The notes under the pieces are model-generated. The model worked only from the letters and a program-made list of their open reading frames with translations. It did no database searches and was not told where the DNA came from. A stretch of DNA of 50,579 nt from Macrostomum lignano (Eukaryota): the NCBI GenBank assembly GCA_002269645.1, contig NIVC01003420.1, positions 1 to 50,579 of the forward strand, in the 5' to 3' direction. Made by a program: the position numbers and the translations under genes. Of this stretch, positions 4,777-33,304 are shown in pieces (the first letter of the stretch is position 1; each line of letters starts with the position of its first letter).

Positions 4777-5468
<692 letters not shown>

Positions 5469-6530: not shown

Positions 6531-7637
6531 GCTAGATTAGCAATCCATGATGGGCTAGATTAGCAATCCATGATAGGCTAGATTAGCAATCCATGATGGG
6601 CTAGATAAGCAATCCATGATAGGCTAGATTAGCAATCCATGATAGGCTAGATTAGCAATCCATGATGGGCTAGATAAGCAATCCATGATGGGCTAGATTA
6701 GCAATCCATGATGGGCTAGATTAGCAATCCATGATGGGCTTGATTAGCAATCCATTCTATTCCTGCAGCCATGATAGGCTAGATTAGCAATCCATTCTAT
6801 TCCTGCACCCATGATAGGCTAGATTAGCAATCCATTCTATTCCTGCAGCCATAATAGGCTAGATTAGCAATCCATTCTATTCCTGCACCCATGATAGGCT
6901 AGATTAGCAATCCATGATGGGCTAGATTAGCAATCCATTCTATTCCTGCACCCATGATAGGCTAGATTAGCAATCCATGATGGGCTAGATTAGCAATCCA
7001 TGATGGGCTAGATTAGCAATCCATGATGGGCTAGATTAGCATCCATGATAGGCTAGATTAGCAATCCATGATGGGCTAGATTAGCAATCCATGATGGGCT
7101 AGATTAGCAATCCATGATAGGCTAGATTAGCAATCCATGATGGGCTAGATTAGCAATCCATGATGGGCTAGATTAGCAATCCATTCTATTCCTGCAGCCA
7201 TGACAGGCTAGATTAGCAATCCATTCTATTCCTTGCCACATGATAGGCTAGATTAGCAATCCATTCTATTCCTGCACCCATGATAGGCTAGATTAGCAAT
7301 CCATTCTATTCCTACACCCATGATAGGCTAGATTAGCAATCCATTCTATTCCTGCACCCATGATAGGCTAGATTAGCAATCCATTCTATTCCTGCACCCA
7401 TGATAGGCTAGATTAGCAATCCATTCTATTCCTGCACCCATGATAGGCTAGATTAGCAATCCGTTCTGTTCCTGCAGCCATGATAGGCTAGATTAGCAAT
7501 CCATTCTATTCCTGCATCCATGATAGGCTAGATTAGCAATCCATTCTATTCCTGCACCCATGATTTCTAGATTAGCAATCCATTCTACTCCTGCATCCCT
7601 GATGGGCTAGATTAGCAGTCCATTCTATTCCTGCACC
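6531..7637 (+). repeat. Satellite left arm: 23-bp units (ggctagattagcaatccatgat[a/g]) grading into 40-bp units (same unit plus tctattcctgca[c/g]ccat)
   Basis: Read directly. Confidence 0.95.
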
Positions 7638-7889
7638 AGCGCCACGGCTACGGGCAAAAGTCGCAGCTAATCGGTCGCGCAGCCTCACACTGATTCACAA
7701 ACATTTCTGGGCCAGGTCAATTCAGGGGCGGCAGAAAAGTGCAGACCATCAAAATAAATAGCTGCTCCAGAACTGAGCAAACCGGCCGACTATTTGATGA
7801 TGCCTGCCCAGCCCTACTGGCAGCGCCACCGAACAGACGGGTTGAAATCGCTTCCCACATTATACAGCTGATTAACTGATAGACAGGTA

Positions 7890-9918
7890 CGATGCAGGAA
7901 TAGAATGGATTGCTAATCTAGCCTATCATGGATGCAGGAATAGAACGAATTGCTAATCTAGCCTATCATGGCTGCAGGAATAGAATGGATTGCTAATCTA
8001 GCCTATCATGGCTGCAGGAATAGAATGGATTGCTAATCTAGCCTATCATGGCTGCAGGAATAGAACGGATTGCTAATCTAGCCTATCATGGGTGCAGGAA
8101 TAGAATGGATTGCTAATCTAGCCTATCATGGATGCAGGAATAGAACGGATTGCTAATCTAGCCTATCATGGGTGCAGGAATAGAACGAATTGCTAATCTA
8201 GCCTATCATGGATGCAGGAATAGAATGGATTGCTAATCTAGCCTATCATGGCTGCAGGAATAGAACGGATTGCTAATCTAGCCTATCATGGGTGCAGGAA
8301 TAGAATGGATTGCTAATCTAGCCTATCATGGGTGCAGGAATAGAATGGATTGCTAATCTAGCCTATCATGGCTGCAGGAATAGAACGGATTGCTAATCTA
8401 GCCTATCATGGCTGCAGGAATAGAATGGATTGCTAATCTAGCCTATCATGGATGCAGGAATAGAATGGATTGCTAATCTAGCCTATCACGGATGCAGGAA
8501 TAGAATGGATTGCTAATCTAGCCTATCATGGCTGCAGGAATAGAACGGATTGCTAATCTAGCCTATCATGGATGCAGGAATAGAATGGATTGCTAATCTA
8601 GCTTATCATGGATGCAGGAATAGAATGGATTGCTAATCTAGCCTATCATGGCTGCAGGAATAGAACGGATTGCTAATCTAGCCTATCATGGCTGCAGGAA
8701 TAGAACGGATTGCTAATCTAGCCTATCATGGCTGCAGGAATAGAATGCATTGCTAATCTAGCCTATCATGGCTGCAGGAATAGAACGGATTGCTAATCTA
8801 GCCTATCATGGCTGCAGGAATAGAATGGATTGCTAATCTAGCCTATCATGGATGCAGGAATAGAATGCATTGCTAATCTAGCCTATCATGGATGCAGGAA
8901 TAGAATGGATTGCTAATCTAGCCTATCATGGATGCAGGAATAGAATGGATTGCTAATCTAGCCTATCATGGGTGCAGGAATAGAATGGATTGCTAATCTA
9001 GCCTATCATGGATGCAGGAATAGAACGGATTGCTAATCTAGCCTATCATGGCTGCAGGAATAGAACGGATTGCTAATCTAGCCTATCATGGCTGCAGGAA
9101 TAGAATGCATTGCTAATCTAGCCTATCATGGCTGCAGGAATAGAACGGATTGCTAATCTAGCCTATCATGGCTGCAGGAATAGAATGCATTGCTAATCTA
9201 GCCTATCATGGATGCAGGAATAGAATGGATTGCTAATCTAGCCTATCATGGATGCAGGAATAGAATGGATTGCTAATCTAGCCTATCATGGATGCAGGAA
9301 TAGAATGGATTGCTAATCTAGCCTATCATGGATGCAGGAATAGAATGGATTGCTAATCTAGCCTATCATGGATGCAGGAATAGAACGGATTGCTAATCTA
9401 GCCTATCATGGCTGCAGGAATAGAATGGATTGCTAATCTAGCCTATCATGGCTGCAGGAATAGAATGGATTGCTAATCTAGCCTATCATGGCTGCAGGAA
9501 TAGAATGGATTGCTAATCTAGCCTATCATGGCTGCAGGAATAGAATGCATTGCTAATCTAGCCTATCATGGGTGCAGGAATAGAATGGATTGCTAATCTA
9601 GCCTATCATGGGTGCAGGAATAGAATGGATTGCTAATCTAGCCTATCATGGCTGCAGGAATAGAATGGATTGCTAATCTAGCCTATCATGGATGCAGGAA
9701 TAGAATGGATTGCTAATCTAGCCTATCATGGCTGCAGGAATAGAATGGATTGCTAATCTAGCCTATCATGGATGCAGGAATAGAATGGATTGCTAATCTA
9801 GCCTATCATGGCTGCAGGAATAGAATGGATTGCTAATCTAGCCTATCATGGATGCAGGAATAGAATGGATTGCTAATCTAGCCTATCATGGCTGCAGGAA
9901 TAGAATGGATTGCTAATC
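7890..9918 (-). repeat. Satellite right arm: ~51 copies of the 40-bp unit in inverted orientation
   Basis: g[a/c/g]tgcaggaatagaatggattgctaatctagcctatcatg is the reverse complement of the left-arm 40-mer. Confidence 0.97.
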
Positions 9919-10476
9919 CAACCTACCTCGGAACAGGAATGCAAGGATCATATTTATTATATTGCTTTCTTTTCTTTCAGTTAGTGGGAGAATTGAATCT
10001 GGTAGAGCATTTGCCCACCCCTCACAGTGCATACTTTCATCCCACATGCCCAGTGCCAGTGCTCCCCTCTCAGGCTGAGCACTGCTGCACTTAGCTAAAC
10101 ATTGTCAGTTTGTTCAAACTCCCTCGATTCCAGAGCTGGACGGCAGATTGCAAACAATTGGCACAATTCAATGGCTAATTTTTGTTCATCTTCTCCGTCC
10201 AATCGTTGGTGCGGAACTCAGCTGAAGTACAAATTAAATATTACCGGATGGCCGGCCCGTGGCAATTCCATGGGGATTGGGGATTAATGGCAAATCAATC
10301 TTCCCTCAGTCTGGCTCCCTTCTAAATAATATTGTGGCCTGAAGTTCAGTGCTCAGAATCTATGATTGAAGCGTGCAGTGCTATCGTTTGAGATGTGGCT
10401 CGGCATTGGCTTCTCATCTGAGCTTTGACTCAACTCGCCAATGAAATGCATCTTGCGATTTCTGTATGTTCTGTCT

Positions 10477-12077: not shown

Positions 12078-13020
12078 GGTCACTGTCTGGCCACATATGA
12101 ACTGCCGCTGCTGACAGTCTCAGTCAACGGCAAGCGGCTGGAAGCCCTCATCGACAGTGGCGCCAGCTGCAACGTCATCGACATGGCGACCTTTCAGGAG
12201 ATCAAGACTGCTAAGACGCCACTTCGGCTGCCAACAAGGCGGCTTTATCCTTTCGGCTCTCGGTCGCCCCTGGAAACTGCCGGCAGGGCTAAGCTCCTGG
12301 TCAACGTCGGCGGCTCGAAGGACATGGTCGACTTCACAGTGATGCGCAACCAGGGCGTCACCATCCTGGGGAGGGTGACGAGTGAGAAATCCGGGCCGAA
12401 AAGGAAGACGCACATCGGCAGAATTGGCAGCGCTGGCCGAATCAAAGCAGCTGAACTTTGACGTGTCCGGAGAGCTACTCCGCGAATCTTCCAACTGACC
12501 AACTCGGTCAAGCGTTCAGCCACCACCAAACAGAAGTTTTAACAGCCAAACCGTCGCTATCCACGCTACCGAAGTCGGCATGGTCGACCATCTGTGTCGA
12601 TTTCATCGGGCCCGTCAACGGTCGGCATTTCCTCATGATACTAGCACTCGCGCTACCCCATCATAGTAGCAATGAAGTCGCTTACAGCTGAAGGCACGAT
12701 CAAGCAGCTGAAGCAGATAAACAGATCTTCGCTATGTTCGGGATTCCAAAGCAAATCATGACCGGCAGCGGTCGGCCATTTTATTCAAAAGTATTCATTC
12801 AATTCGTCACGAGTCAGCGGATCGGTCACGAGCGGATCAAGCTGCATCCAGAGGCCCAGCGCATCGTGGAGGGCATGAAGCGGCTCCTAAACAATCTGCT
12901 CCGCTCCTTCAGCGCTCAAGGAGCCGCCTGGAGTGTTGCGCTGCGAGACTGGCTCGCCGCGTACCGCAGCAACCCAAACATCGACACGGGAGCCGCGCCA
13001 GCTAATCTGCTGTTCATCAC
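12078..13020 (+). mobile_element. Degenerate, internally deleted Ty3/gypsy LTR-retrotransposon pol remnant (aspartic protease and integrase core)
   Basis: VNGKRLEALIDSGASCNVID is a retropepsin DSG motif. WSTICVDFIGP, FGIPKQIMTGSGRPF and HPEAQRIVE are gypsy integrase-core blocks, frameshifted. No RT/RNase H lies between them and no LTRs were recognised. Confidence 0.85.
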
Positions 13021-13469
13021 CGATCGTACGCTGTGTTCATTCAGCATTGGACTAATGATAAACTTTTAATTTATTTTGGGCTAATGCGAGCCTTCTTTAA
13101 GTGCCGCTTTCATTCCTTTTAATTTCTTTCGAAAATTCTTGCAGGGGAAGATGTACTCTATTCTACCTAGCGCCCAGCGCCCAGCGTCTATTTATAATGT
13201 ACATCAAACTACATTCACAATACCTAAGTGCACGTTGATCTCTGAGCGAACCCTTAGATCTCAAATATATAAATCGCAATCGATGCCCAAGTGGAGGCTA
13301 ACTTCGTATTCAGCAAATTCTACTCGATTACTACAGTCACTGCGACTGTTACCTTCTATGTGGGTGTCATGATTGCTGTGTCACTGTCACTGCGTCACAG
13401 TCAGTGCGTCTCTTTTACTGTGTCACGGTTACAGTGCGAAGATCACTGTGTCACACTGTGAATGTGAAA

Positions 13470-13650: not shown

Positions 13651-14014
13651 ACCCCCCAGTCTTTGGACTGAACAGCCGTACGCAGCCTTCAGATGCGCCG
13701 CGCAATAGTTGCGGCTGAGCTGTCGGTTGCACATCTGCCAATTAGCTGTTTTTTAAGAAACCTGTGCCACGATCAATGTCATAACATTCTTTCATTCTTC
13801 CTGCAGTCGTCAGTCTGCAGATCTCTGATGACACAGGTGGTCAATCTTCAAAATGAAACTAGGCACAGTCAGAGGACGCTCGCACCCCACCCCATTTCAT
13901 CAGCGTAAATTGAACACAATAATTAGCGAGAAAGAAGGCAATCCCAGCTCTATAAAAGGAATTCAACACGGGTGTCCCACTGGGTTACAGTTGTTCGCAG
14001 TCGAATCAGCCGCC

Positions 14015-14714
14015 ATGTCGGAGATCCGGAAGATTACCCGCGCCTTCGTCAGCCAGACGACCATCCACGGCGTGCGCCGGCTGAACGATGGCCCACTGAT
14101 ATATCGGCTCGCGTGGGTGCTGCTAGTTTTTGGCACCTTTGTCGGGTTCCTAATACACCTGGGCCAGCTCCTGACTCGCTACGCTGAGTACCCGGTCAAC
14201 ACGGAGAACTACGAGGGCGTGGACGACTTCCAATTCCCGTCGGTGACCATTTGCCCCAATGACTACATCCACTATGACTACCGGTTCAACCCCATTCCAG
14301 GGCCGGGCGAAGACAGGCGCTCTCTCTACGACATGGTGTACGACCTGGCGCGAGTCTGGTACCGCATCAAGTACAACGACACAAACATCCCCGTCTATCC
14401 CTACAGCGAGTACGACGATGGCAAATACTCGCTGAAGCAGGTGGCCTACAGGTCGCAGCAATTTCAAACCCTGAAGGACACGGTAGTGTACTGCCGGTTC
14501 AACTCCCGCGAGTGCTCCTACGACGATTTCCGGGTCTACAAAGACCCCATCAGGTTTCTCTGCTTTACCTTCACGCCCAAAAATCGTGACGGCCTGCAAA
14601 TTGGCGAGGGCAACGGACTGTTCCTCATCCTATACTCCAACTCCAACAGCTTCCTCACCGAGGAGGAGGAGGTCAACCACATCCCGGGATTTTCAGTGTC
14701 ACTGCACGAGCCGA
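14015..14714 (+). CDS. DEG/ENaC amiloride-sensitive channel, coding exon 1
   Basis: gccgccATG; MSEIRKITRAFVSQTTIHGVRRL (pre-TM1 HG motif), TM1, YxxYPVNT, FPSVTICP, YCRFNSRECS, CFTF, GL.LIL, GFSVSLHEP; donor A|gtgagt. Confidence 0.93.
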
Positions 14715-15065
14715 GTGAGTTCGAATCGGGTTTCGACTTTAGAATCTTATACTTTACACGAAAGCTGTTTACGAGTTACAGGTACCCACTCTAACTTTTT
14801 GAAACTTCAAGTCCAAAGAACTCGCTAAAAAATTGTTTCCGCACGCAAATAGATTTAATTGTCTGAGTGAAGCCGAGGCACTCAATGATATTGAGAAAAA
14901 CCTTGAGCAAAATGCAAAACGTCATTAGCTTAAGTTAACGTAAAACTGCTTATGTTTTCAAAGGTCGCTTCCATCGCCATTATGAAGCCTTCCATTTTCT
15001 AATTCATTGAACGTTCTGCATTTTCCAAGCTTCACTCCATCCGCCTCACCCGCCTCCACCGGCAG

Positions 15066-15899
15066 ATGCGAATCCCTTCACTGCCACGGCCATTGCGGTG
15101 CCGCTTCAGCAGCGACTGAGCGTCGACGTCAGCCAGAAGATCGAGACAAAGCTTGACCGCGACGCCTACGAGTGCAGCGAGGACCTGGGCATAGTTGACT
15201 ACGTCAGCGACTACAGCCGCTCAAACAGCAACCCTGAGCTCGTGTCCTTCCGCGCCAAGCAGCAGGACTGCCAGCTGCGCCGCCAGCAGCTGCAGTTTCT
15301 ACACGAATGCGGCTGCCTGGCGGAGCACCTGCCAATCCCTTCGGACCTCATGCCGGCCGCCCGGCCCTGCCACGAGATGTGGGAGCCGATGTTCTTCATT
15401 GACATCCGGCCGCCAACCAACACCTCGGCCAGCATGACCATCAAGAACGGAAGCACTGTGCAGAGCTTCGAGGAATTTTACCAGGCAAACTTGGCCCGCT
15501 GGGAGCAGCTGCGTCGAGCTGCCCTCTGTTTTGACAGAGTTGAGAGTCTCCAGAGAGGCCGCACCGCAGCGGACGACTGCAACCGGCTGTGCCGGCGCTC
15601 CGAGTTTCCCGCGTCCGTGATGGCCACTCGCTGGCCGATGGACTCGGCGGCCGGCTACTCAGTGACAGCATTTCAGAGTTCAATGGACATGTTTCTGAGC
15701 AGGGCGATAGCCAAGGCTGAGTCCGTTGATAATGCCACTCTGGCCAGCCTGCGTGCGGCGATGAATCGGCCAGTGCCGGAGAAGTTTCAGTACTTCAGCC
15801 TGCTGGATTTGCACATTTCCGCCTCTGGAGCGTACCACTACATTGAGGACTGGGTCTACCCCCTGCGGAACTTGCTGTCTGACCTCGGCGGCATCCTGG
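15066..15899 (+). CDS. DEG/ENaC channel, coding exon 2 (Cys-rich thumb to start of TM2)
   Basis: ggcag|AT acceptor, phase 1; Cys-rich region (ECS, DC, ECGC, CNRLCRRSEF), YPLRNLLSDLGGILG; donor G|gtgagc. Confidence 0.92.
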
Positions 15900-16019
15900 G
15901 TGAGCTGGGTCCTCATTCTGTCATGGTGGATCGTTGGTACCAATGCTCATAGGTTTACTGCACTGTTTTTTACTGAACAGTTTGTTAATAGGCAGAAAAC
16001 TGATTCAAACTTTGTACAG

Positions 16020-16180
16020 GACTCTGGATCGGTGCCAGCATCATCACCATGATTGAGCTGCTGGAGCTGCTGCTGCGCATCGGGTTCTCATTTCCAGATG
16101 CCTGCGGCCAACCAGCAAGGAGGAGACATCGGCTGGGACCGACAAGAGGACCGTCTCTGACTCGCCAGCCTGAAACCTGA
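16020..16180 (+). CDS. DEG/ENaC channel, coding exon 3 (TM2, GAS filter, stop)
   Basis: tttgtacag|GA CTC TGG ATC GGT GCC AGC = GLWIGASIITMIELLELL; TGA at 16178-16180. The spliced CDS is 1695 nt (564 aa). Confidence 0.9.
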
Positions 16181-16194
16181 AATCCGCTTCGTCT

Positions 16195-16500
16195 CTCTGA
16201 CCTGTGTGCATCAGTCTCACCTGTATACAGGCATTTCTTACCTGTGCACAGACCAATCTATCCTGTGTGCAGCAGTCTCACCAGTATACAGGCATATCCT
16301 ACCTGCGCATAAACCAATCCCCCCACTTGTGCATAAACCAAATCCACCTTGCAAAGACCAATCCCACCTGTTCACAAACCAATCCCACCTGTTCACAAAC
16401 CAATCCCACCTGTTCACAAACCAATCCCACCTGTGCACAGACCAATCCCAACTGTACACAGACCAATATTACCTGTCTCACCTGTCTCACCTGTCTTACC
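16195..16500. repeat. Degenerate 21-bp tandem repeat (acctgt[t/g]cac[a]aaccaatccc)
   Basis: Read directly; translates as QTNPTCS repeats. Confidence 0.85.
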
Positions 16501-16502
16501 TG

Positions 16503-16561
16503 GCTGGCGGCGCAGCTGGCAGTCCTGCTGCTTGGCGCGGAAGGACACGAGCTCAGGGTTG
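16503..16561 (-). repeat. Perfect 59-nt inverted copy of DEG/ENaC exon 2 (15229-15287)
   Basis: The reverse complement is identical to caaccctgagctcgtgtccttccgcgccaagcagcaggactgccagctgcgccgccagc. Confidence 0.95.
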
Positions 16562-17874
16562 AACTGTCTCACCCATCCATCACCGTTTGCGTCACCCAAC
16601 AAATATTTATTATGGTCTAGAAGCATACTTATGTATTTTAACTGGAAGTTCTTGATCCCAGGAGGTACGAGTACTATTGAAACTCCGTGGACCCAATCAA
16701 TATAAAATTTCTAATTACGCTCCCATTTGGATTGGCTAAAGAAGCTACTTCGTGAAATTTCCTACCCAACTGACAGTAGGAGTTTTCGAGCATGCCTCGT
16801 AATATCGTTGTATGCAGTAAAAACTGCCGACAAGAATGCTGCTTGAATTTGATCGGAGCTGGAAACTCCACTCTGCACTTTTTTGGGATTCCAACCTCTA
16901 TTCATACCTTCACTCACCCAGTCTAAATTAACTTCTTCTAATTAATCATGTTTTCATGTGTGCCCAGACAAATATGTCTAAGTTTGATTTGATTGCTTCT
17001 AGCAGAGAGAACGACAGAAAAGTTTAATTCCGGCTAAGGCTCGAAGATTCCAGCCATAGCAACAGAATATGCATGCATGCCATTTTTCTGCTGCGAGTAC
17101 TTGCAGTGTTCTCTGCTTCCCCAGATTCTACTAGTGAGATTTTCACAGGAGGAATATCCAGCCATTTTCATTTCTGGTTTTTACCTGAGGCTTTTCAAAA
17201 AGTAGCCAAGGATGTCTTCAAGAGCCACGATGACAGCTGTGCAGTCACTCCTGCTGGCCTTAGCGATCGACATCAGCATGTGATGACTTGAAAACAGCGG
17301 TAGCTGATGCTCAACCCCAAGATCACCAGCCCAGGGGTTGCGAGTCGCGACAGACGGGCTGGTAGACACGCCGCGGACAACCTCTGAGACTGGGAAACAG
17401 AGTAGTTTAGATTTTCTTACTGTCGTATGCAAAGTGTCGAGGTGATGACCGAATGCTTGAGAGACTATTTGAGTAATTCTAGCAGTTGCGACTTGCCCAC
17501 TGTCGAGGATTGATCAGAGAAATCGGACAGGGTGTTCATGGTCACTTGGTGCCACCTGTTGAAGGTCCAGGAGCTCCACCTGACTGAAGGCCTGGGGCCA
17601 CCAAAGTTATTGATGATGCAGACACATGTGGTTGACGTACTGCTGAAATATGAGGGACTGACAAGGCCTCACTGGTGCACAAGAGTGTACTGAATTCATT
17701 AGCGCTTGTGTAAAAAAACCGAACTTCTGGCAGAATCGTTGAATTTCTCGACTTTGTTGAAGGCTGGCGACTTGATTATCGTTTGATAAGGTGCATAACA
17801 GAATGTTAGGCCAGTTTGCAAGTTTGTGAGTCTGCGTTGCTCCGTTCCGGTGTAGAAAGCAATTGTCAGTGGGG

Positions 17875-18205
17875 GGTCACTGGTTAGTGGTCCCTGGTCC
17901 CTGGTTAGTTGTCCTTGGTTAGTGGTCTCTGGATGGTGGTCCCTGATTATTGATCACTAGTTAGTGGTCCCTAGTCCCTGGTCCCTGGTTAATGATCACT
18001 GGTTAATGGCCCCTGGTTATTTGTCACTGATTGGTGGTCCCTGCTGTTTAGTTGTCCTTGGTTAGTGGTCTCTGGTTAGTGGTCCCGATTAGTGGTCCCT
18101 GTTATTGGTTTCTGGTTAGTGGTCCCTGATCCTTGGTTAGTTGTCCTTTTTAGTGGTCCTTTTTGATATTGGTCACTGGTTAGTGGTCCCTGGTTAGTGG
18201 TCCTC
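17875..18205. repeat. Degenerate ggttagtggtccct-type tandem repeat
   Basis: Read directly. Confidence 0.85.
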
Positions 18206-19693
18206 GGTAGGTAATTCAGGTACTATCAGTAAATCAAAAAGTAATCAAAGTTTGATCTCTATTTGCATGAGTTAAAATGCACACACAGACCTCGCTCTGC
18301 AAGCACATTACTCGGTTGATACTGCTTTCTACCCACAGAGGCCACCTTTGATTAGTTTTCGTGCTCAGTGTGCGGCCCTGAAGCCCCGGCTCTGAATAAA
18401 TGTTGGGCCAAGCAATTAAAAAATTGCTGAATTGCAACTTCGTTTTGTTGGCGATTTGGCAAGATTAAAGATCATTCATTGAAAATTAACAAGATGGAGA
18501 ATTTTGGCTGCCTTAGAATGAGTCGTCATTGTGAACGAGTTCTAGCTTTTCTGTTCGAGAGTTTCTCCCATGTATTTTTCTCCCGTTTCTGTGTGCTAAA
18601 AAAGGTGAATTTCGAAATCCTTAAATGGACAGACAAGAGTTCTTGAATGGTAGAGTGAAAGACCGCTTCAATGTTGCTCTCAAATATTAATTTTACACTG
18701 ATAAAGGTTAGAAAAAAGGCGATAAAGAACTGACAGAAACTTCTAGGAAGAGTTCAGCCAGCTTTAAACTGACTCCTTGTCACTCCATAGAAGGCTTGCC
18801 TTGGAACTCCCTGGCACAGAAAAGATAACTAACAGTAAAGGTTGTAAGGGAAGGCAGCTATTACTGCTGCCAACGACCTCAGTTTGAACCCTAAATACAC
18901 AATGTGCATTCCCGCCCTTCTTACCCATGCTCTCAGCCAATGGCGGACAGGTTTTAGAGAACGCTCTGTCGATTAGGCTGCATAATACTGTCCACTCGTC
19001 CTTTTATCGCTGGGTCTGCCCCAGCCAGAACCGGGCGACGCCGCCCTCACCCAGCGTACACGCGTCGTGGCAGTGCAGGATCGGGAGACACCCCGACCCA
19101 ACCTCTCACATTTTTCTACACCTCGTCTCTCGACCATCGACAAATATAAAAGCAGGATTTTCATACCTAGCAGCTGGGAAGGCTTTTGTATAGACTGATT
19201 AACTTGTGCCGCGACTTACAAGTCTCCTCTTACTCATTCGGATCGAAAGCGAAGCTTCGGTCGTTTCACTTGATGAGGTAGGAGCCAGGACAGTCATAAT
19301 CTTGCTGTAGCGTTTAGCCATTATTAGTGTCTATCCTATCGTTGAAAAAAACAGAAATTATTTACTAATACCTTTTCGTACAGTTTTCTGCGAGGACGAT
19401 TGGAACGTTGCAGAATGGCTCTATTTGTTCCCAACCCAACCAAATGTAGCCACGGAACAACAGTGAATTCACATTTGCACAACAGAAAATCTTAGTCAAA
19501 ACAACATTTTGTACTCTAAAACAGCAACACAACACAATATTAGTAATAGCTGGAAGCCGCAACTTTTACTACTTCAAGTAGGAAGCGAAACTTATAAAGG
19601 TCAAAAAATGAAATTTTTAATGGTTACTTGGCGAATAATTAACAACCTGCCCCATCAATTCAAATTTCAGTCCGACTTCAAATCAAGCTAAAC

Positions 19694-20815
19694 ATGAACG
19701 ATTCAGTCATCAGCCGGGCTGTCACCGAAAACGATGGATCGGCGCTACCGTCGGGAAACGCCCTGGACGTTCGCATCGACAAGTCAACAACGTCGCACCT
19801 GAGCCAAATATCATCCGGAATCTACAGCATGGAATCCGGGAGCGACGATGGCGTATGCGATAGCCTCAGTCGTGCATTCCGAGAAATCGGACTCAAAGAG
19901 GTCGGTACGAATCGCGAGCTATCCGCTTCCGACACCGCGGCTCAAGTCGACGGCTGGGTGCAGCGGAGCTGCGATCAGACAGCCAGCGAAAAGGAAACGG
20001 ACGTGGATCCGTTCGAGGATGACGTCACGGAAGCCGCAGATACGGACCAGGTGGAAGTATTGGACGAGGATGACGTCACGGAAGCCGCAGATACGGACCA
20101 GGTCGAAGTATTGGATGATGACGAAGAGACCTGGACATCGCGGGTGGCCGTCAAGCGGTGCTCTTCGCTGAAGAGCAGCTGCTCGACTGACAGCGACAGT
20201 AGCCGACGCACCAAAAAGGCCGTGCGATTCGCCGACTCACTCGGCTTGGATCTCATCAAGGTGCGCCACGTATTCAAGTTCGACGCACCGACTGAGACGG
20301 AGCCGACTCTTCGGCAACTTGGACGCAGGCGAGACTCTTTGGCTCCCGCATCTGCTGATCGGTCTCGGCGGCGCCTCTTAGTCAGTCCGTGCTTTCCTCA
20401 ACCGGGAGGCTGCGCCGGCTTCATCTCGCGAGTCATGTCTCAGAAGATAATGCTCGAGAGGGCGTCGTTCGATCAGAGCAGCCGCGTTCTGTCCGGCCAC
20501 ATCCGGGTGTGCAACCTGCACTTCGAGAAGCGAGTAACTGTTCGAGTCACATTCGACGGCTGGCACAGCTGCAGCGAGGTCCCGGCGGTCTACGAGGCAT
20601 CGGACACAGCCGCCAACATGACTGACAGGTTCGCTTTCCGGATCCCGATGCCGCCCGGCTTCGGCACAGGGGCGGGCGATCGAGCGGCGCTCTGCGTTCG
20701 CTACGACACCTTGGGGCAGACGTTCTGGGACAGCAACTATGGGGAGAACTACACGTTCGACTGCCTGCCACTCGGATGGGAGGACTCAGACGAGTCATTA
20801 GCAAGCTTTTCGTAG
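19694..20815 (+). CDS. PPP1R3-like: Protein phosphatase 1 glycogen-targeting regulatory subunit (CBM21), copy 1, 373 aa
   Basis: RVxF motif KKAVRFADSLGLDL, CBM21 motif GHIRVCNLHFEKRVTVRVTFDGW, glycogen-synthase-binding WDSNYGENY; uninterrupted ORF. Confidence 0.93.
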   Translation: MNDSVISRAVTENDGSALPSGNALDVRIDKSTTSHLSQISSGIYSMESGSDDGVCDSLSRAFREIGLKEVGTNRELSASDTAAQVDGWVQRSCDQTASEKETDVDPFEDDVTEAADTDQVEVLDEDDVTEAADTDQVEVLDDDEETWTSRVAVKRCSSLKSSCSTDSDSSRRTKKAVRFADSLGLDLIKVRHVFKFDAPTETEPTLRQLGRRRDSLAPASADRSRRRLLVSPCFPQPGGCAGFISRVMSQKIMLERASFDQSSRVLSGHIRVCNLHFEKRVTVRVTFDGWHSCSEVPAVYEASDTAANMTDRFAFRIPMPPGFGTGAGDRAALCVRYDTLGQTFWDSNYGENYTFDCLPLGWEDSDESLASFS

Positions 20816-21228
20816 ATCTGATATGCATCGTCGTTGTCAGTCATTTTTTATTTTTGATATCGAGATTTCTCTTGCGTTGGCAGTTTGTTTTTCTTACTGC
20901 TCAAGTATTGTTTTTAGATAGCAGATTTGCGATTTTTAGGTGGGAGCCGATGAATTTCGAAGTTTTTTGTGTTTTAAAAATCCATTTTGAACTGCATATT
21001 TTTACAACTTCTTTCAAATCTAATTTGTGGAAAGAGCATCTTTAGTCTTTGCGTTAGGTTTCTTGAGCAGCCGGTGTTTCTCTGTTGTCTGTACCTAAAC
21101 AGTGGATTTTCAAAGTTTCCGTTCGCTGTAGTAGTTTGAGTTCAATTAGTATTCTCGGCAGCACTTCTGCGTTAAGATTTTCTTCATCTGCATGCAGCGT
21201 TGCTTCATGGCGTACCGACCGCATGCTA

Positions 21229-22207
21229 CCTTAGTGTGTCCAAAAAGTTCTTAGACACCCTTCCTATCTCTGTATCTGTTCAAGCGATTTTTTATAAAAA
21301 ATTACACAAACATGGACCTATATGTAATGAATTCAGTGCTAACATTTCAGCTTAATCGGGTTGACAGAGCAAAAGCAATCGATCATTTACTGAGGAACCT
21401 ATGAAATTAGCAATACGATTTTTGAAGAGCATCGAACCTGGACTCCAGTGGTGACATTGCAGCTCATTTTTTAGAAAAATTAATCAGCAAAAATATCACT
21501 GCTTTCGCTGAGTATTGATTACTACCTTAACTGATTTAATACTAATGCCAGCTGTGAGGGTTTAGCCAGAGATTAAAGAGCAAAAAAGAACAAAGCAGTA
21601 AGCAGCATAGCCAGAGTGCACAGAGATTCAGATGCTGAGACGCGGAACCAGCCTCAGGTGGAAAGGAGCAGAAGAATTGCCTATACGAAGTCTGCTTGCA
21701 ACAAAGGGCGGCAATTTCAGCTCTGGGAGACGAGTTCAATCTGAGCAGATTCAGCACACAGGATGAGTCCAAGAGGCCAGCGGTTTGCCAGCTTCCCCCG
21801 AGCTGCAAGCGGCTGCTGAGGGGCTGATCAGAACGACACCTAGGGATATGTGGTCGGCGTGGATTGAGGATGAGTTGCCGATGCGATATGACAAGTGCAT
21901 TCGACGGAATGAAGATTCTTCTGAAGATTTTCACGATTGGTGATCCGTTTTTGAAGTTCTGGAACTTGTCAGTTTGAACTGTTTGCTCGTTAACTTTTAC
22001 ATTTTGTTGAGTTTAAAATCGTATTGCTAATTTCGTAGGTTCCTCAGTAAATGATCGATTGCTTTCGCTCTGTCAACCCGATTAAGCTGAAACTTTAGCA
22101 CTGAATTCAAAACATATTGGCCCATATTTGTGTAACTTTTTATATAAATCGATTAAACAGATGCAGAGATAGGAGGCGTGTCTAAGAACTTTTTGGACGC
22201 ACTGAGG
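21229..22207 (+). mobile_element. Non-autonomous Tc1/mariner-type DNA transposon, ~195-bp imperfect TIRs, TA target duplication
   Basis: ta|ccttagtgtgtccaaaaagttcttagacac... and ...gtgtctaagaactttttggacgcactgagg|ta. TIRs are ~21229-21422 and ~22015-22207. The interior encodes TPRDMWSAWIEDELPMRYDKCIRRN, resembling a Tc1/mariner transposase C-terminus. Confidence 0.88.
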
Positions 22208-23361
22208 TAGTTGGGCGAATATTCTAATTGGACCACAGCTGCAGATTTTGATTCAATGCTGGTTCTTTCAAGAAGGGCCTCTTAGCATGAGGGTACTGTA
22301 GTTTGCTTTTCTTAGAAATTTCACCCGTCATGTACACGAACTAAAGTATAGGTATCTTTGAACAGAATTCGAATGTGGCGAGATTTAAGGCTAACAGTCT
22401 ATTTTACTACAATAGTTTTTTATTCTGTGCGATGTCACGCGAGTACGAAGTTAACTTGAAACGAATCAATACAAAGTTCTACTATTTTATTTGAATCATA
22501 ACTGCAAAAAAACTCAATCAGCCGCTTTGAGCCTGTTTGTTGAACGGAAAAAGTCAGATTTTCAAATGACCTTCAAAAGTTATTCTGCTCAATTTCGTAA
22601 TTTCATTGTCAAATCTAAATAAACAAGGTAGCACTGTAAAAACTGTTAGTCATTTAACCACCGGGAAAATGATAATGGCACCTCAACTAACCTTAATTGG
22701 GCCTACTGCAGGTGAAGGTCGTCTAAAGTGACTTCATTTACAAAGCAATAGATACGCTCGTAATATATGTATTGATTTTTCCCAGCCCTGGCATCGAACT
22801 TTATTTATTCAAGAATTCTTGCTAAATTGCTATGAGGTTCAACATTGATTTTTTAATTTTTAATAAGTGTTTTGAAAGCTTTCGCAGTTACTTGTACATT
22901 TCGGTCTTCTATCTAATGGCTAATCCCGAGTTCCAGGATTAAAAAGGTTTCGAGTGCATAAATTTATTAATATACTTCATCATTCTTTACCGTCATTAAG
23001 AAAGAGGTGAGGATACCAGATTACCCAATGTTTGCATATAAAACTATTAGCAAAAACTAAAAACGGTCTTCTACCTTATCTTCTAGACTTACCACCCAGG
23101 GTCTGTTTACGTCTGATCTCGGTTTATATACGCTACTTCATCAAGTCAGCCAGTTAATTGAATTCCCGTGTCAAACCGTGGGCCATCATCCCGGAATGCT
23201 TTCAATCCTGGCACAGATGCTCTGGTTGCGAACTCTAGCATTAGCAAGCAACGGCATCGACAGTACGAGCGTACAAACCCGATGATGTACTTTAGAAAGC
23301 TGAAGTCTGACGAGAAGAGAAGAGAAGAGAAGAGAAGCTCAAGTTTTTCCAGTACAGGTTT

Positions 23362-24985: not shown

Positions 24986-26780
24986 AAAAATGGGTTTGGT
25001 AAGCAGCCCGTAGCTTATAACGGATGACGTAACTATCATAGCCACCCCCTTACCTTCAGGCCAGTCTTGATGGGGGTCCCCGCTGTTTTCAATGCATCCT
25101 GACAGATAATAATTGAAGTTCAATCTGTAAACAAGTGCCCTGACATTGCCGCGTATGCATTTCCGATCTACAGTAAATATAGAAATTGAAAAGGGCATGG
25201 TGAACTTTAAAACCACAGCTACTGATAAAATAGCCGCTGCTTTCGAAAACCGGAAAAAAAGGATTATGAAATAAAGTCCTGGGACATTCAAAATCGATAG
25301 GCTTGAGAGAAGCCTCATTGCTGTCCATGCCATGGTCAAGCGAAAAGTCACAAAAGTAACAAAAGCGATTCGTCACAGCGAAAAGTACATGAAATAAATT
25401 CGTCACGTGATGACATTGGCTGCAACATTTTTTCACAAAAAGCGTGACTGTTTCTATGCTTATCAGTGAGTTGTGAGCATTTGCAAATTTACAAAGCGAG
25501 AATGTACTAGTTAATAAATCTCTTCTTGCAAAATTTACATTCACCCACATCTAGAGAGTATAAATTCTTCCAAGTCTTCAAAGTACTTCTTAAGCTAAAT
25601 CTAGTTAAAACCAAGTTTGCCAACTAACACTCGTCCGGCAGACTCATCTCAAGAAAGTGAAAGCCAAATCAAAGCCAAAGAAAGTCAAAGAAATCTTGTG
25701 CGTATTGTGAGCCTGCTCAGGTTAATGGGACAGAACTGCCTTGCCAGCAGGCTAATTGACCGTTTCACCGAAGGCAGGATTCCCGCAACCAATAGGCATT
25801 AGGAAATTATCAGTAACACAGGCAGCTACCAGAAATTCTGTTTTCTATGCCCTATTCGACCTTTCGTGTCAAATTTCAGACGAGTCACCGTGACAGAAAC
25901 CGCTCCGACATGGCAAGTGGTAAACAACTTGCGCAGACAAGTGCGCAGATAGCAGCCAAGGAGAAAAGGGGGGGGGCAGCAGTGGAGACATTCAAGTGTC
26001 AGTGATTCTACGATAGCACGGCGACTGTGTGGGTTTGTTTGGCCCAAAAACCTCTATATGAACCCTGAGAATCAAAGTGTAATGTGCGGCGTCTGTCTGA
26101 CCTTCTACCCAGCCGGCCTGCCAGCTAATAGTAAACAGCAGAGGTTGGTCAGGTCAGTGGGCAGTGTACGAGTATACATGGGGCAGCTGACATTCTTGCC
26201 TACCCTGCCTTCAATCAAAGCCACTCTGAATACCAAAGGGTGTTCATTCACAAGTACGCGCGCCCGGCTGTACAGGAGCGCAAAGAATCCAGGCATTCCC
26301 GATTTCTCTTCCCCTAGGATTTTTCTCTCCCCGACCGGCTAAAACTGCCTCTCCTCCATTGGGTAAGGCAGAGCTGATTTACAGCAGTAGTGTGGAAGTG
26401 TGCGAGGGTCTGCACGTTTAATATCCCGGTAGCAATTAACTTTTTTTCTACGGATAAGCAGGTGGATCTTCACTTATTGAGGCAAGTTGGTGAGTAACTT
26501 CGAGCTGGTATGTGCACCCAGCTCAAGATTTTTAATTTTATCCCTCGAAAACAGATGCAGTTGTTTTATTAGCATTGTTACCAATTCTCTGAAAAATTGC
26601 GGTAGCTGAAGTCCAGGAAGGGCCAGTGACTTCTTTTGACAGATCCATTATTTATAAAAAAATGATTGACCTGAATAAAGGTACCGACAATAGACAATTC
26701 AATATTATGAAAAACTGTAAGCAAAGGTGGATTGTTTATTATATTCGAATTTCAGTCCGACTCTGAAAATGCAACCGGTC

Positions 26781-27890
26781 ATGAACGATTCAGTCGCCAC
26801 CGAAAACGATGGATGGACGATGCCGCCGGGAAACACCCTGGACGTTCGCATCGACAAGTCAACAACGTCGCACCTGAGCCAAATATCATCCGGAATCTAC
26901 AGCATGGAATCTGGGAGCGACGATGGCGTATGCGATAGCCTCAGTCGTGCATTCCGAGAAATCGGACTCAAAGAGGTCGGTACGAATCGCGAGCTATCCG
27001 CTTCCGACACCGCGGCTCAAGTCGACGGCTGGGTGCAGCGGAGCTGCGATCAGACAGCCAGCGAAGAGGAAACCGACGTCGATCCGTTCGAGGATGACGT
27101 CACAGAAGCCGCAGATACGAACCAGGTGGAAGTATTGGACGAGGATGACGTCACAGAAGCCGCAGATACGGACCAGGTCGAAGTATTGGATGAGGACGAA
27201 GAGACCTGGACATCGCGGGTGGCCGTCAAGAGGTGCTCTTCGCTGAGGAGCAGCTGCTCGACTGACAGCGACAGTAGCCGACGCACCAAAAAGGCCGTGC
27301 GATTCGCCGACTCACTGGGTTTGGATCTCATCAAGGTGCGCCACGTATTCAAGTTCGACGCACCGACTGAGACGGAGCCGACTCTTCGGCGACTTGGACG
27401 CAGGCGAGACTCTTTGGCTCCCGCATCTGCTGGTCGGTCTCGGCGGCGCCTCTTAGTCAGTCCGTGCTTTCCTCAGCCGGGAAGCTGCGCCGGCTTCATC
27501 TCGCGAGTCATGTCTCAGAAGATAATGCTCGAGAGGGCGTCGTTTGATCAGAGCAGCTGTGTTCTGTCCGGCCACATCCGGGTGTGCAACCTGCACTTCG
27601 AGAAGCGAGTAACTGTTCGAGTCACATTCGACGGCTGGCACAACTGCAGCGAGGTCCCGGCGGTCTACGAGGCATCGGACACAGCCGCCGACATGACTGA
27701 CAGGTTCGCTTTCCGGATCCCGATGCCGCCCGGCTTCGGCACAGGGGCGGGCGATCGAGCGGCGCTCTGCGTTCGCTACGACACCTTGGGGCAGACGTTC
27801 TGGGACAGCAACTATGGGGAGAACTACACGTTCGACTGCCTGCCACTCGGATGGGAGGACTCAGACGAGTCATTAGCAAGCTTTTCGTAG
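26781..27890 (+). CDS. PPP1R3-like: PP1 glycogen-targeting subunit, copy 2 (alternative ATG at 26769)
   Basis: Same RVxF, CBM21 and WDSNYGENY motifs; near-identical to copy 1. Confidence 0.93.
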   Translation: MNDSVATENDGWTMPPGNTLDVRIDKSTTSHLSQISSGIYSMESGSDDGVCDSLSRAFREIGLKEVGTNRELSASDTAAQVDGWVQRSCDQTASEEETDVDPFEDDVTEAADTNQVEVLDEDDVTEAADTDQVEVLDEDEETWTSRVAVKRCSSLRSSCSTDSDSSRRTKKAVRFADSLGLDLIKVRHVFKFDAPTETEPTLRRLGRRRDSLAPASAGRSRRRLLVSPCFPQPGSCAGFISRVMSQKIMLERASFDQSSCVLSGHIRVCNLHFEKRVTVRVTFDGWHNCSEVPAVYEASDTAADMTDRFAFRIPMPPGFGTGAGDRAALCVRYDTLGQTFWDSNYGENYTFDCLPLGWEDSDESLASFS

Positions 27891-32125: not shown

Positions 32126-33304
32126 ATGAACGATACAGTCACCAGAAAGTCTGGCACTACTCGTGTAAACGATGGATCGACGCTGCCAAAAGAAATTTTG
32201 GCCGTTTGCATCGACAAGTCAACACCGTCGCACCTGAGACAAATATCATCTGGCTTCTACAGCATGGAATCTGGGAGCGACGACGGCGTATGCGATAGCC
32301 TCAGTCGTGCATTCCGAGAAATCGGACTCAAAGAGGTCGGTACGAATCGCGAGCTATCCGCTTCCGACACCGCGGCTCAAGTCGACGGCTGGGTGCAGCG
32401 GAGCTGCGATCAGACAGCCAGCGAAGAGGAAACCGACGTCGATCCGTTCGAAGATGACGTCACGGAAGCTGCAGATACGTACCAGGTCGAAGTATTGGAC
32501 GAGGATGACGTCACGGAAGCTGCAGATACGTACCAGGTCGAAGTATTGGACGAGGATGACGTCACGGAAGCCGCAGATACGGACCAGGTCGAAGTATTGG
32601 ATGAGGACGAAGAGACCTGGACATCGCGGGTGGCCGTCAAGCGGTGCTCTTCGCTGAAGAGCAGCTGCTTGACCGACAGCGACAGTAGCCGACGCACCAA
32701 AAAGGCCGTGCGATTCGCCGACTCACTCGGCTTGGATCTCATCAAGGTGCGCCACGTATTCAAGTTCGACGCACCGACTGAGACGGAGCCGACTCTTCGG
32801 CGACTTGGACGCAGGCGAGACTCTTTGGCTCCCGCATCTGCTGGTCGGTCTCGGCGGCGTCTTTTCGTCAGTCCGTGTTTTCCTCAGCCGGGAAGCTGCG
32901 CCAGCTTCATCTCGCGAGTCATGTCTCAGAAGATAATGCTCGAGAGGGAGTCGTTCGATCAGAGCAGCTGTGTTCTGTCCGGCCACATCCGGGTGTGCAA
33001 CCTGCACTTCGAGAAGCGAGTAACTGTTCGAGTCACATTCGACGGCTGGCACAACTGCAGCGAGGTCCCGGCGGTCTACGAGGCATCGGACACAGCCGCC
33101 GACATGACTGACAGGTTCGCTTTCCGGATCCCGATGCCGCCCGGCTTCGGCACAGGGGCGGGCGATCGAGCGGCGCTCTGCGTTCGCTACGACACCTTGG
33201 GGCAGACGTTCTGGGACAGCAACTATGGGGAGAACTACACGTTCGACTGCCTGCCACTCGGATGGGAGGACTCAGACGACGAGTCATTAGCAAGCTTTTC
33301 GTAG
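32126..33304 (+). CDS. PPP1R3-like: PP1 glycogen-targeting subunit, copy 3, 392 aa (three acidic repeats)
   Basis: Same motifs; one extra 51-nt EDDVTEAADTxQVEVLD unit and an extra Asp near the C-terminus. Confidence 0.93.
   Translation: MNDTVTRKSGTTRVNDGSTLPKEILAVCIDKSTPSHLRQISSGFYSMESGSDDGVCDSLSRAFREIGLKEVGTNRELSASDTAAQVDGWVQRSCDQTASEEETDVDPFEDDVTEAADTYQVEVLDEDDVTEAADTYQVEVLDEDDVTEAADTDQVEVLDEDEETWTSRVAVKRCSSLKSSCLTDSDSSRRTKKAVRFADSLGLDLIKVRHVFKFDAPTETEPTLRRLGRRRDSLAPASAGRSRRRLFVSPCFPQPGSCASFISRVMSQKIMLERESFDQSSCVLSGHIRVCNLHFEKRVTVRVTFDGWHNCSEVPAVYEASDTAADMTDRFAFRIPMPPGFGTGAGDRAALCVRYDTLGQTFWDSNYGENYTFDCLPLGWEDSDDESLASFS

What the first reader, a model, noticed from the sequence alone, without database searches (positions are those of the whole stretch)
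15229..16561. Perfect antisense copy of 59 coding nucleotides placed ~320 nt after the stop codon of the same gene
16503-16561 is the exact reverse complement of exon 2 positions 15229-15287. It is fused to the end of a 21-bp array that degenerates into acctgtctc triplets, suggesting a recent template switch during repeat replication or repair. I see no canonical AATAAA between the stop and this copy, so it may be in the 3'UTR. The mRNA would then fold a 59-bp perfect, GC-rich duplex between 3'UTR and CDS (loop ~1.1 kb), a potential ADAR or Dicer substrate, translation block or cis-antisense autoregulator.
Basis: partly seen in the sequence, partly recalled or inferred. Interest (0 to 1): 0.7.

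Follow-up and report, generated by a model that had tools for sequence, protein, structure and literature searches.

The report
Inverted exon fragment inserted downstream
A 59-base piece of an ion-channel gene's coding sequence has been copied backwards into a repeat array about 320 bases after the gene's stop codon, most likely as a recent scar of DNA replication or repair jumping to a nearby template. It could make the transcript fold back on itself, but nothing here shows that it has a function.

Summary
16503-16561 is the exact reverse complement of 15229-15287 (59/59), and it is the only isolated short inverted repeat around the gene. The gene is an intact three-exon DEG/ENaC (Pfam ASC) channel of a Macrostomum-like flatworm. 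The coding arm lies in exon 2 and encodes residues conserved in M. lignano homologues, so it is the source. The downstream arm is a sharp-edged insert that interrupts a 9-bp ACCTGTCTC array at the end of 61-bp and 21-bp minisatellites, 322 nt after the stop. The flanks show no residual homology, no target-site duplication and no junction microhomology. The best reading is a recent, local, reverse-complement templated insertion: a template switch or snap-back during replication or repair of the minisatellite. This is a known kind of mutation, unusual only for its 1.2-kb reach and 59-nt length. The predicted RNA duplex is real on paper (-142.6 kcal/mol, formed in the MFE fold). Whether the copy is transcribed into the mature mRNA is unknown: the lack of AATAAA over 322 nt is expected by chance (P about 0.7). 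No other strain, read set or transcript could be found, so function, polymorphism and assembly correctness remain untested. Interest is low to moderate.

The parts
14015..14714 (+). Coding exon 1 of a DEG/ENaC (ASC) channel gene, from ATG 14015 to a GTGAGT donor after 14714.
   Evidence: ORF. The joined 576-aa protein matches Pfam ASC PF00858 over profile positions 1-455 of 455, E=5.3e-51.
15030..15899 (+). Coding exon 2, with an AG acceptor before 15030 and a GTGAGC donor after 15899.
   Evidence: Its translation aligns with Macrostomum lignano ASC homologues.
15229..15287 (+). Source arm: 59 coding nucleotides encoding (S)NPELVSFRAKQQDCQLRRQ(Q).
   Evidence: The invariant D79 and C80 of the homologue alignment lie inside this stretch, so this copy is the ancestral one.
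16020..16180 (+). Coding exon 3 (TM2 with the GAS motif, short C-terminus), with TGA at 16178-16180.
   Evidence: TM2 aligns to FaNaC1 8on7.
16201..16467 (+). Minisatellites in the 3' flank: 61-bp unit x2 (16201-16319), then 21-bp unit ATCCCACCTGTGCACAAACCA x8.1 (16296-16467).
   Evidence: Tandem Repeats Finder; families D1, D2 and D4.
16471..16502 (+). 9-bp array ACCTGTCTC x3.6. The last unit is cut after ACCTG by the insert.
16503..16561 (-). Derived arm: an exact reverse-complement copy of 15229-15287, inserted into the 9-mer array.
   Evidence: The flanks carry no residual similarity to the source flanks.
16562..16570 (+). A further 9-mer unit (AACTGTCTC) after the insert, which shows that the insert lies inside the array and not at its end.
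   Evidence: Direct reading.

Best explanation
This is a real, evolutionarily recent mutational scar: a local reverse-complement templated insertion. While the minisatellite behind the gene was being replicated or repaired, a free 3' end on the + strand, ending ...ACCTGTCTTACCTG, left its template. It paired with the same strand (or the equivalent sister or lagging-strand template) 1.2 kb upstream inside exon 2 and copied 59 nt, from 15287 back to 15229. It then returned to the array, which continues AACTGTCTC ACCC. The perfect fidelity and long reach fit a replicative template switch (four-point template-switch, FoSTeS or MMBIR type), or a long-range snap-back on a resected end, better than typical polymerase-theta filler synthesis. 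The insert most likely has no selected function. As a by-product, any RNA spanning both arms can form a 59-bp perfect duplex. Shown: the sequence anatomy, the polarity of copying, and the sharp edges. Inferred: the mechanism, the recency and the neutrality.
For: The exact 59/59 reverse complement is unique in the window.

Polarity: the coding arm is in frame in a full-length ASC match and contains the invariant D and C of the alignment with M. lignano homologues. The other arm interrupts a 9-mer tandem array, and a further unit follows it.

Sharp edges: Smith-Waterman scores of the copy flanks against the reverse-complemented source flanks are at or below the shuffle means (12 vs 12.7 and 12 vs 14.3). 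This is an insert, not the remnant of a larger inverted duplication.

Locality: the source lies 1.2 kb away on the same molecule. For a random fragment from a genome of several hundred Mb (the M. lignano assembly is 764 Mb) this would have a probability of about 3e-6 (my arithmetic).

Orientation: a + strand 3' end on the left side of a break, using its own resected + strand as template, gives exactly the observed reverse-complement configuration. This is the 'snap-back' geometry described in PMC5068794.

Known process: template switches are documented to create perfect reverse-complement repeats tens of bases long, up to 59 bp (PMC5453318; PMC8794818).

Context: the region is dense in minisatellites, as in M. 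lignano, where simple and tandem repeats make up 15% of the genome.
Against: Neither junction has exact microhomology (0 nt). MMBIR, FoSTeS and Pol theta models usually show at least 1-5 nt. The pre-insertion allele is unknown, so this cannot be judged properly.

The 1.2-kb source-to-target distance is far beyond the short-range events that the four-point model was built for, and beyond the usual Pol theta inserts, which are under 25 bp and lie a few bases from the junction.

The array's single strand is not unusually structured (z = -1.07), so there is no specific evidence that it stalls forks.

There are no reads, no second assembly and no other strain, so an artefact or a maintained functional element is not excluded.
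Confidence: 0.68

Rival explanations
1. The inverted copy is a functional cis-antisense module. It lies in the 3'UTR, pairs with the CDS in the nucleus or in untranslated mRNA, and is used for ADAR editing, Dicer-derived self-targeting siRNAs, or translational or stability control of this channel mRNA.
For: The duplex is very stable (-142.6 kcal/mol) and 57 of 59 arm pairs form in the MFE fold of the spliced 1213-nt piece. No canonical poly(A) hexamer lies on the + strand for 2214 nt after the stop (P about 0.09 by the window rate). The neighbouring genes' first hexamers lie 481-757 nt after their stops, so a UTR longer than 380 nt is plausible. Macrostomum makes long polycistronic precursors (PMC5730564), so the primary transcript probably crosses the copy. 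Flatworms have ADARs (PMC8797187).
Against: There is no evidence of transcription, editing or small RNAs. Perfect identity is equally expected for a young neutral insert. The nearest available homologue locus in M. lignano has no CDS-to-flank inverted repeat, although it is only 35% identical and is therefore a weak test. The lack of a hexamer in the 322 nt before the copy is expected by chance (P about 0.70). Ribosomes would unwind a CDS arm on every pass. Two CATAAA variants (16308, 16332) lie upstream of the copy.
Confidence: 0.07
2. It is an assembly or library artefact, such as a chimeric molecule or polishing error fixed in the consensus, and does not exist in the animal's genome.
For: It is a single occurrence, it sits in a tandem-repeat region where assemblies are weakest, and no independent sequence of this locus could be found.
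Against: The sequence returns to the same array after exactly 59 nt, so there are two clean junctions. Typical fold-back, missed-adapter or amplification chimeras continue as long palindromes. The array and the CDS share no k-mer at either junction (0 nt), so a graph mis-join has nothing to work with. A consensus built from many reads would not normally keep a single chimeric read.
Confidence: 0.1
3. A double-strand break in the array was sealed by end joining that captured a free 59-bp DNA or cDNA fragment of the gene (filler DNA or templated-sequence insertion), not by a polymerase switching templates in cis.
For: Both junctions are blunt, with no microhomology, as in classical NHEJ capture. 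The source is wholly exonic, so an RNA-derived fragment is formally possible.
Against: The source gene is intact, so the fragment had to be a copy in any case. Capture of a fragment from the very same gene 1.2 kb away is improbable unless the process is local. There is no poly(A) tract, no exon junction and no target-site duplication to indicate reverse transcription.
Confidence: 0.1
4. The two arms are the terminal inverted repeats of a mobile element, or the last remnant of a larger inverted segmental duplication of the gene.
For: Formally it is a 59-bp perfect inverted repeat bracketing 1215 bp.
Against: The interior is conserved channel-coding sequence, including TM2. There is no direct repeat outside the arms (GCTCAAACAG on the left, AACTGTCTCA on the right). 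There are no other copies in the window. There is no residual similarity beyond the arms.
Confidence: 0.02

Closest known systems
Template-switch mutations (four-point model of Loytynoja and Goldman 2017, PMC5453318; TSM-born RNA hairpins and miRNAs, PMC8794818 and bioRxiv 10.1101/2023.04.19.537475)
   Same: A single event copies a nearby segment in reverse-complement orientation and instantly creates a perfect inverted repeat or hairpin. Patterns up to 59 bp are reported.
   Different: Those events are short-range, with source and target within a few to some hundreds of bases, forming compact hairpins. Here the source is 1216 nt away, in a coding exon, and the target is a minisatellite. The authors explicitly did not model long-range switches.
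Polymerase-theta templated insertions, snap-back (in cis) class (PMC5068794, PMC4912351, PMC2943611)
   Same: A 3' end at a break is extended on its own flank, giving a reverse-complement insert. The geometry matches, with the template on the same side of the break and on the same strand.
   Different: Reported inserts are mostly under 25 bp, map a few bases from the junction, are primed by at least 1 nt of homology and carry about 1 error per 30 nt. Here the insert is 59 nt and error-free (probability about 0.13 at that error rate, my arithmetic), lies 1.2 kb away and has no junction homology.
FoSTeS/MMBIR replicative template switching (named from established knowledge; mentioned in PMC5453318)
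   Same: A stalled or collapsed fork switches to a nearby template within kilobases and inserts short templated stretches in either orientation, with replicative fidelity.
   Different: It is usually recognised at breakpoints of copy-number changes and shows 2-5 nt microhomology. Here there is no accompanying rearrangement and no microhomology.
Hairpin-RNA / endo-siRNA loci and long 3'UTR inverted repeats edited by ADAR (named from established knowledge)
   Same: A transcript containing both arms would carry a long perfect intramolecular duplex.
   Different: Known loci have arms of hundreds of nt or repeated-element pairs, and they have documented small RNAs or editing. Here one arm is the gene's own CDS, the duplex is 59 bp, and no expression data exist.

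Membership tests
Template-switch mutation (four-point model) | The inserted or replaced segment is the exact reverse complement of a nearby segment of the same locus. | tested here: met
   59/59.
Template-switch mutation (four-point model) | Short range: the source is close to the switch point (the model was built for short-range switch-and-return). | tested here: not met
   The source is 1216 nt from the target. The authors exclude long-range switches from the model.
Template-switch mutation (four-point model) | The ancestral state, from an outgroup or other allele, shows that one event explains the change. | not testable with these tools
   No orthologous or allelic sequence was found.
Pol theta templated insertion (snap-back) | Reverse-complement insert whose template is on the same side of the break. 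| tested here: met
   The orientation and side fit extension of the + strand 3' end at 16502 on the + strand at 15287 to 15229 (definition).
Pol theta templated insertion (snap-back) | Small insert (mostly under 25 bp) templated within a few bases of the junction. | tested here: not met
   59 nt, 1216 nt away (compared).
Pol theta templated insertion (snap-back) | At least 1 nt of priming homology at the junction. | tested here: inconclusive
   There is 0 nt at both observed boundaries, but the pre-insertion allele is unknown and 1-2 untemplated bases could mask nearby CTG/CTGT matches.
MMBIR/FoSTeS | Microhomology of 2-5 nt at the junctions, with an associated complex rearrangement. | tested here: not met
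   No microhomology and no other rearrangement or duplication of the gene region.
Transposon with terminal inverted repeats | Target-site duplication outside the arms, multiple copies, and a non-host interior. | tested here: not met
   There is no flanking direct repeat. There are only two sites in the window. The interior is conserved ASC coding sequence.
Hairpin-RNA / cis-antisense regulatory element | Both arms are present in one transcript, with small RNAs or A-to-I editing over the arms. | not testable with these tools
   No transcript or small-RNA data were available. Only the fold prediction could be made.
DEG/ENaC (Pfam ASC) channel - the host gene | Full-length match to PF00858 above the curated cut-off, with the N-terminal HG motif and the TM2 G-x-S motif. 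| tested here: met
   174.5 bits against a cut-off of 23.6, profile positions 1-455 of 455. TTIHGV and LWIGASIIT are read in the translation. The best solved relative is FaNaC1 8on7, E=2.9e-22.

The most novel reading that the evidence does not exclude
The insert is a newborn self-targeting hairpin. A single long-range template switch placed an antisense copy of the channel's own CDS into its 3'UTR. The transcript now carries a 59-bp perfect duplex that is processed (ADAR recoding of the cysteine-rich extracellular segment, or Dicer-derived siRNAs against the gene and any close paralogues). That would be the birth of a cis-regulatory RNA structure caught before any decay.
Probability: 0.06. 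Interest if true: 0.6.

Novelty: new member of a known kind. Interest (0 to 1): 0.25.

Why it matters
If real, it is a clean natural example that a template switch can reach more than a kilobase, copy 59 nt without error, and in one step create a long perfect CDS/3'-flank duplex in a protein-coding transcript. This is the raw material from which hairpin RNAs or editing sites could evolve. It also marks a minisatellite as a site of replication or repair error. In addition, a 59-bp perfect inverted repeat bracketing the last 1.2 kb of the gene could mediate inversions that would destroy the channel gene. As an isolated single-genome observation with no expression or population data, its value is mainly as an illustration and as an annotation or assembly check.

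Tried and rejected
1. Cross-sample evidence. The neighbouring single-exon CBM21 ORF is not on record. A metagenome scan with the exon-2 protein and an exact 38-mer of the arm both found nothing. So no second copy of the locus, no transcript and no empty site could be obtained.

2. The exhaustive HMMER search gave only seven relatives. The three best that I looked up are all from Macrostomum lignano, and the best is 35% identical. Its genomic locus (L001) has no CDS-to-flank inverted repeat and no nucleotide similarity to the window gene. This helped with polarity but is not a test of presence or absence.

3. 'The array is a hairpin-prone fork barrier.' Not supported: the ssDNA fold gives z = -1.07, and no short palindromes were detected in the 21-bp or 9-bp units.

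4. 'Remnant of a larger inverted duplication.' Rejected: the flanks score at or below shuffles.

5. 'Transposon TIRs.' Rejected: there is no TSD, no other copies, and the interior is coding.

6. Junction microhomology. Only offset, imperfect matches were seen (CTGT two bases from the right junction; A.CTG with a 1-nt offset on the left). I judged these not distinguishable from chance.

7. Rfam found nothing in the window.

8. The minus-strand ORF across the copy (16414-16626) and the ORF at 17181-17432 have no Pfam match.

9. One search failed on a coordinate-format error of mine and was repeated.

Full report
**Observation.** The claimed repeat exists exactly as described. The repeat finder reports arms 15229-15287 and 16503-16561: 59 nt, 100% complementary, 1215 nt apart. 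A search allowing three mismatches finds only these two sites in the window, and none in 100 dinucleotide-preserving shuffles. Self-BLAST of the gene region (13800-19700) against the whole window returns nothing else for the gene or its flanks. A window-wide inverted-repeat scan shows that, apart from a large pair of oppositely oriented satellite arrays and one 197-nt 90% pair, this is the only isolated inverted match, and it is perfect.

**The host gene.** Reading the splice signals and joining the ORFs gives a three-exon gene:
- Exon 1 runs from ATG 14015 to 14714, followed by a GTGAGT donor.
- Exon 2 is 15030-15899.
- Exon 3 is 16020-16180, ending in TGA at 16178-16180.

The 1893-nt test join, started at an upstream in-frame ATG (13853), reads through to that TGA without a stop. 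The 576-aa product from ATG 14015 matches Pfam ASC (amiloride-sensitive sodium channel, DEG/ENaC) over the whole profile, E=5.3e-51. Its best solved relative is the FMRFamide-gated channel FaNaC1. The HG motif and the TM2 GAS motif are both present. So the gene looks intact, the left arm lies in the second coding exon, and the right arm starts 322 nt after the stop.

**Organism.** The ASC protein has no close relative in the large protein sets. The exhaustive search found seven relatives, and the three best that I looked up are all Macrostomum lignano proteins, at 35% identity or less. An IP3-receptor exon in the window is 74% identical to an M. lignano protein. The window's 40-bp satellite shares its 15-mer core, TAGATTAGCAATCCA, with a 42-bp satellite beside the M. 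lignano homologue: 61 and 55 exact copies respectively. The window therefore most likely comes from a Macrostomum-like flatworm that is not itself in the searchable collections. This fits the very high minisatellite density and the published 15% simple and tandem-repeat content of M. lignano (PMC5730564).

**Polarity of the copy.** The coding arm encodes NPELVSFRAKQQDCQLRRQ. In the alignment with the M. lignano homologues, the invariant D79 and C80, together with the recurrent F-R and R..Q positions, fall inside this stretch. The coding copy is therefore the old, constrained one. The other arm interrupts a tandem array. The sequence reads ACCTGTCTC ACCTGTCTC ACCTGTCTT ACCTG | 59 nt | AACTGTCTC ACCC.... 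The insert thus lies inside the 9-mer array, not at its end. Compared with an uninterrupted array, either 4 nt (TCTC) were lost or 5 nt (A[C/A]CTG) were duplicated. Without the empty allele this cannot be decided.

**Edges.** The match stops abruptly on both sides. The next bases disagree, so there is 0 nt of junction microhomology. Local alignment of 150 nt of each copy flank against the reverse-complemented source flank scores at or below the shuffle mean. This excludes a decayed larger inverted duplication. There is no direct repeat outside the arms and no further copy, and the interior is conserved coding sequence, so a transposon with terminal inverted repeats is excluded too.

**Mechanism of origin (inferred).** Four features point to a cis-acting templated process and away from capture of a random fragment:
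- the source is on the same molecule, 1.2 kb away;
- the orientation is reverse-complement;
- the fidelity is perfect;
- the target is a tandem array.

A random genomic source would fall this close with a probability of about 3e-6 for a genome of several hundred Mb (my arithmetic; genome size).

The geometry is exactly that of a + strand 3' end at 16502 being extended on the + strand from 15287 down to 15229. That can happen as an intra-strand snap-back on a resected break end. It can equally happen as an inter-strand switch at a stalled fork (four-point template-switch model, PMC5453318; snap-back definition in PMC5068794).

Typical polymerase-theta inserts are under 25 bp, lie a few bases from the junction, are primed by at least 1 nt and carry about one error per 30 nt. 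At that error rate a 59-nt error-free tract has a probability of about 0.13 (my arithmetic). I therefore favour a higher-fidelity replicative switch (FoSTeS/MMBIR-like), or an unusually long-range snap-back, and hold this sub-choice loosely. Template switches are documented to create perfect hairpins of tens of bases, the largest reported pattern being 59 bp (PMC8794818). I looked for a reason why the array would stall replication and found none: its single strand is not unusually structured (z = -1.07).

**Age.** Zero differences in 59 sites bound the divergence between the copies below about 5% at the 95% level (my arithmetic). The insert is recent on an evolutionary scale. Continuous homogenisation or selection cannot be excluded from one genome.

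**Consequences at RNA level.** The two arms have 69% GC, and their duplex is predicted at -142.6 kcal/mol. In the MFE fold of the spliced 1213-nt piece, 57 of the 59 arm pairs form. The coding arm contains 10 adenosines and the copy 8.

Whether both arms are ever in one mature mRNA is unknown:
- There is indeed no AATAAA or ATTAAA between the stop and the copy. At the window's own hexamer density this is expected 70% of the time, so it is weak evidence.
- The absence continues for 2214 nt (P about 0.09).
- The three neighbouring genes have their first hexamer 481-757 nt after the stop.
- Macrostomum makes long polycistronic precursors.

It is therefore plausible, but not shown, that at least the primary transcript contains the copy. 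Flatworms possess ADARs (PMC8797187). In the cytoplasm, translating ribosomes would open a duplex that involves the CDS. No datum here supports an actual regulatory role.

**Artefact.** I could not examine reads. Three points argue against an artefact. The sequence returns to the same array after 59 nt. The two loci share no k-mer at the junctions that could cause a graph mis-join. The usual fold-back chimeras are long palindromes, not short inserts. I leave about 10% for this.

**Verdict.** The functional readings remain speculation. It is a new example of a known mutational class, notable for reach and length. Its interest is modest unless expression or population data show that the duplex is used.

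Noticed in passing
window 6531-7637 and 7893-9925: Two arrays of the same 40-bp satellite (with 23-bp subrepeats in the first) lie in opposite orientation around a spacer of about 255 nt, forming a kilobase-scale imperfect palindrome. This is another sign of strand-switching or inversion in tandem repeats of this region.
   Followed up: partly
window 6533-9880; L001 4-2278: The satellite core TAGATTAGCAATCCA occurs 61 times in the window and 55 times in a 42-bp satellite next to the Macrostomum lignano ASC homologue. The satellite family is shared, which points to a Macrostomum-like host.
   Followed up: partly
window 21226-21422 and 22015-22210: A second isolated inverted repeat, 197 nt at 90% identity with about 590 nt between the arms. 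It may be the terminal inverted repeats of a small transposon or foldback element.
   Followed up: no
window 19694-20815, 26727-27890, 32126-33304: Three tandem single-exon genes encode CBM21 domain proteins, resembling protein phosphatase 1 glycogen-targeting subunits (Pfam E about 1e-29). They carry an in-frame 51-bp repeat in 2.0, 2.1 and 3.1 copies.
   Followed up: partly
window 40121-41071 and 47454-48221: Exons of an inositol trisphosphate/ryanodine-receptor type channel (Ins145_P3_rec, MIR and RIH domains). The closest protein is from M. lignano at 74% identity.
   Followed up: partly
window 1502-4333 and 4777-5468: A 23-bp satellite of about 128 copies with essentially no A on the + strand (AT skew -1.0), followed by a TCTG microsatellite of 173 copies. 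These create very long spurious ORFs in all frames.
   Followed up: no
window 12458-13069: Two broken + strand ORFs just upstream of the channel gene look to me like retroelement integrase, for example CVDFIGPVNGRHFLMI and PFYSKVFIQF. Pfam gave no hit at E<=0.01.
   Followed up: partly
window 16606-16611: An AATAAA on the minus strand lies 45 nt to the right of the inverted copy. A leftward transcript using it would end just before the copy. No minus-strand gene was recognisable in 16600-19690.
   Followed up: partly
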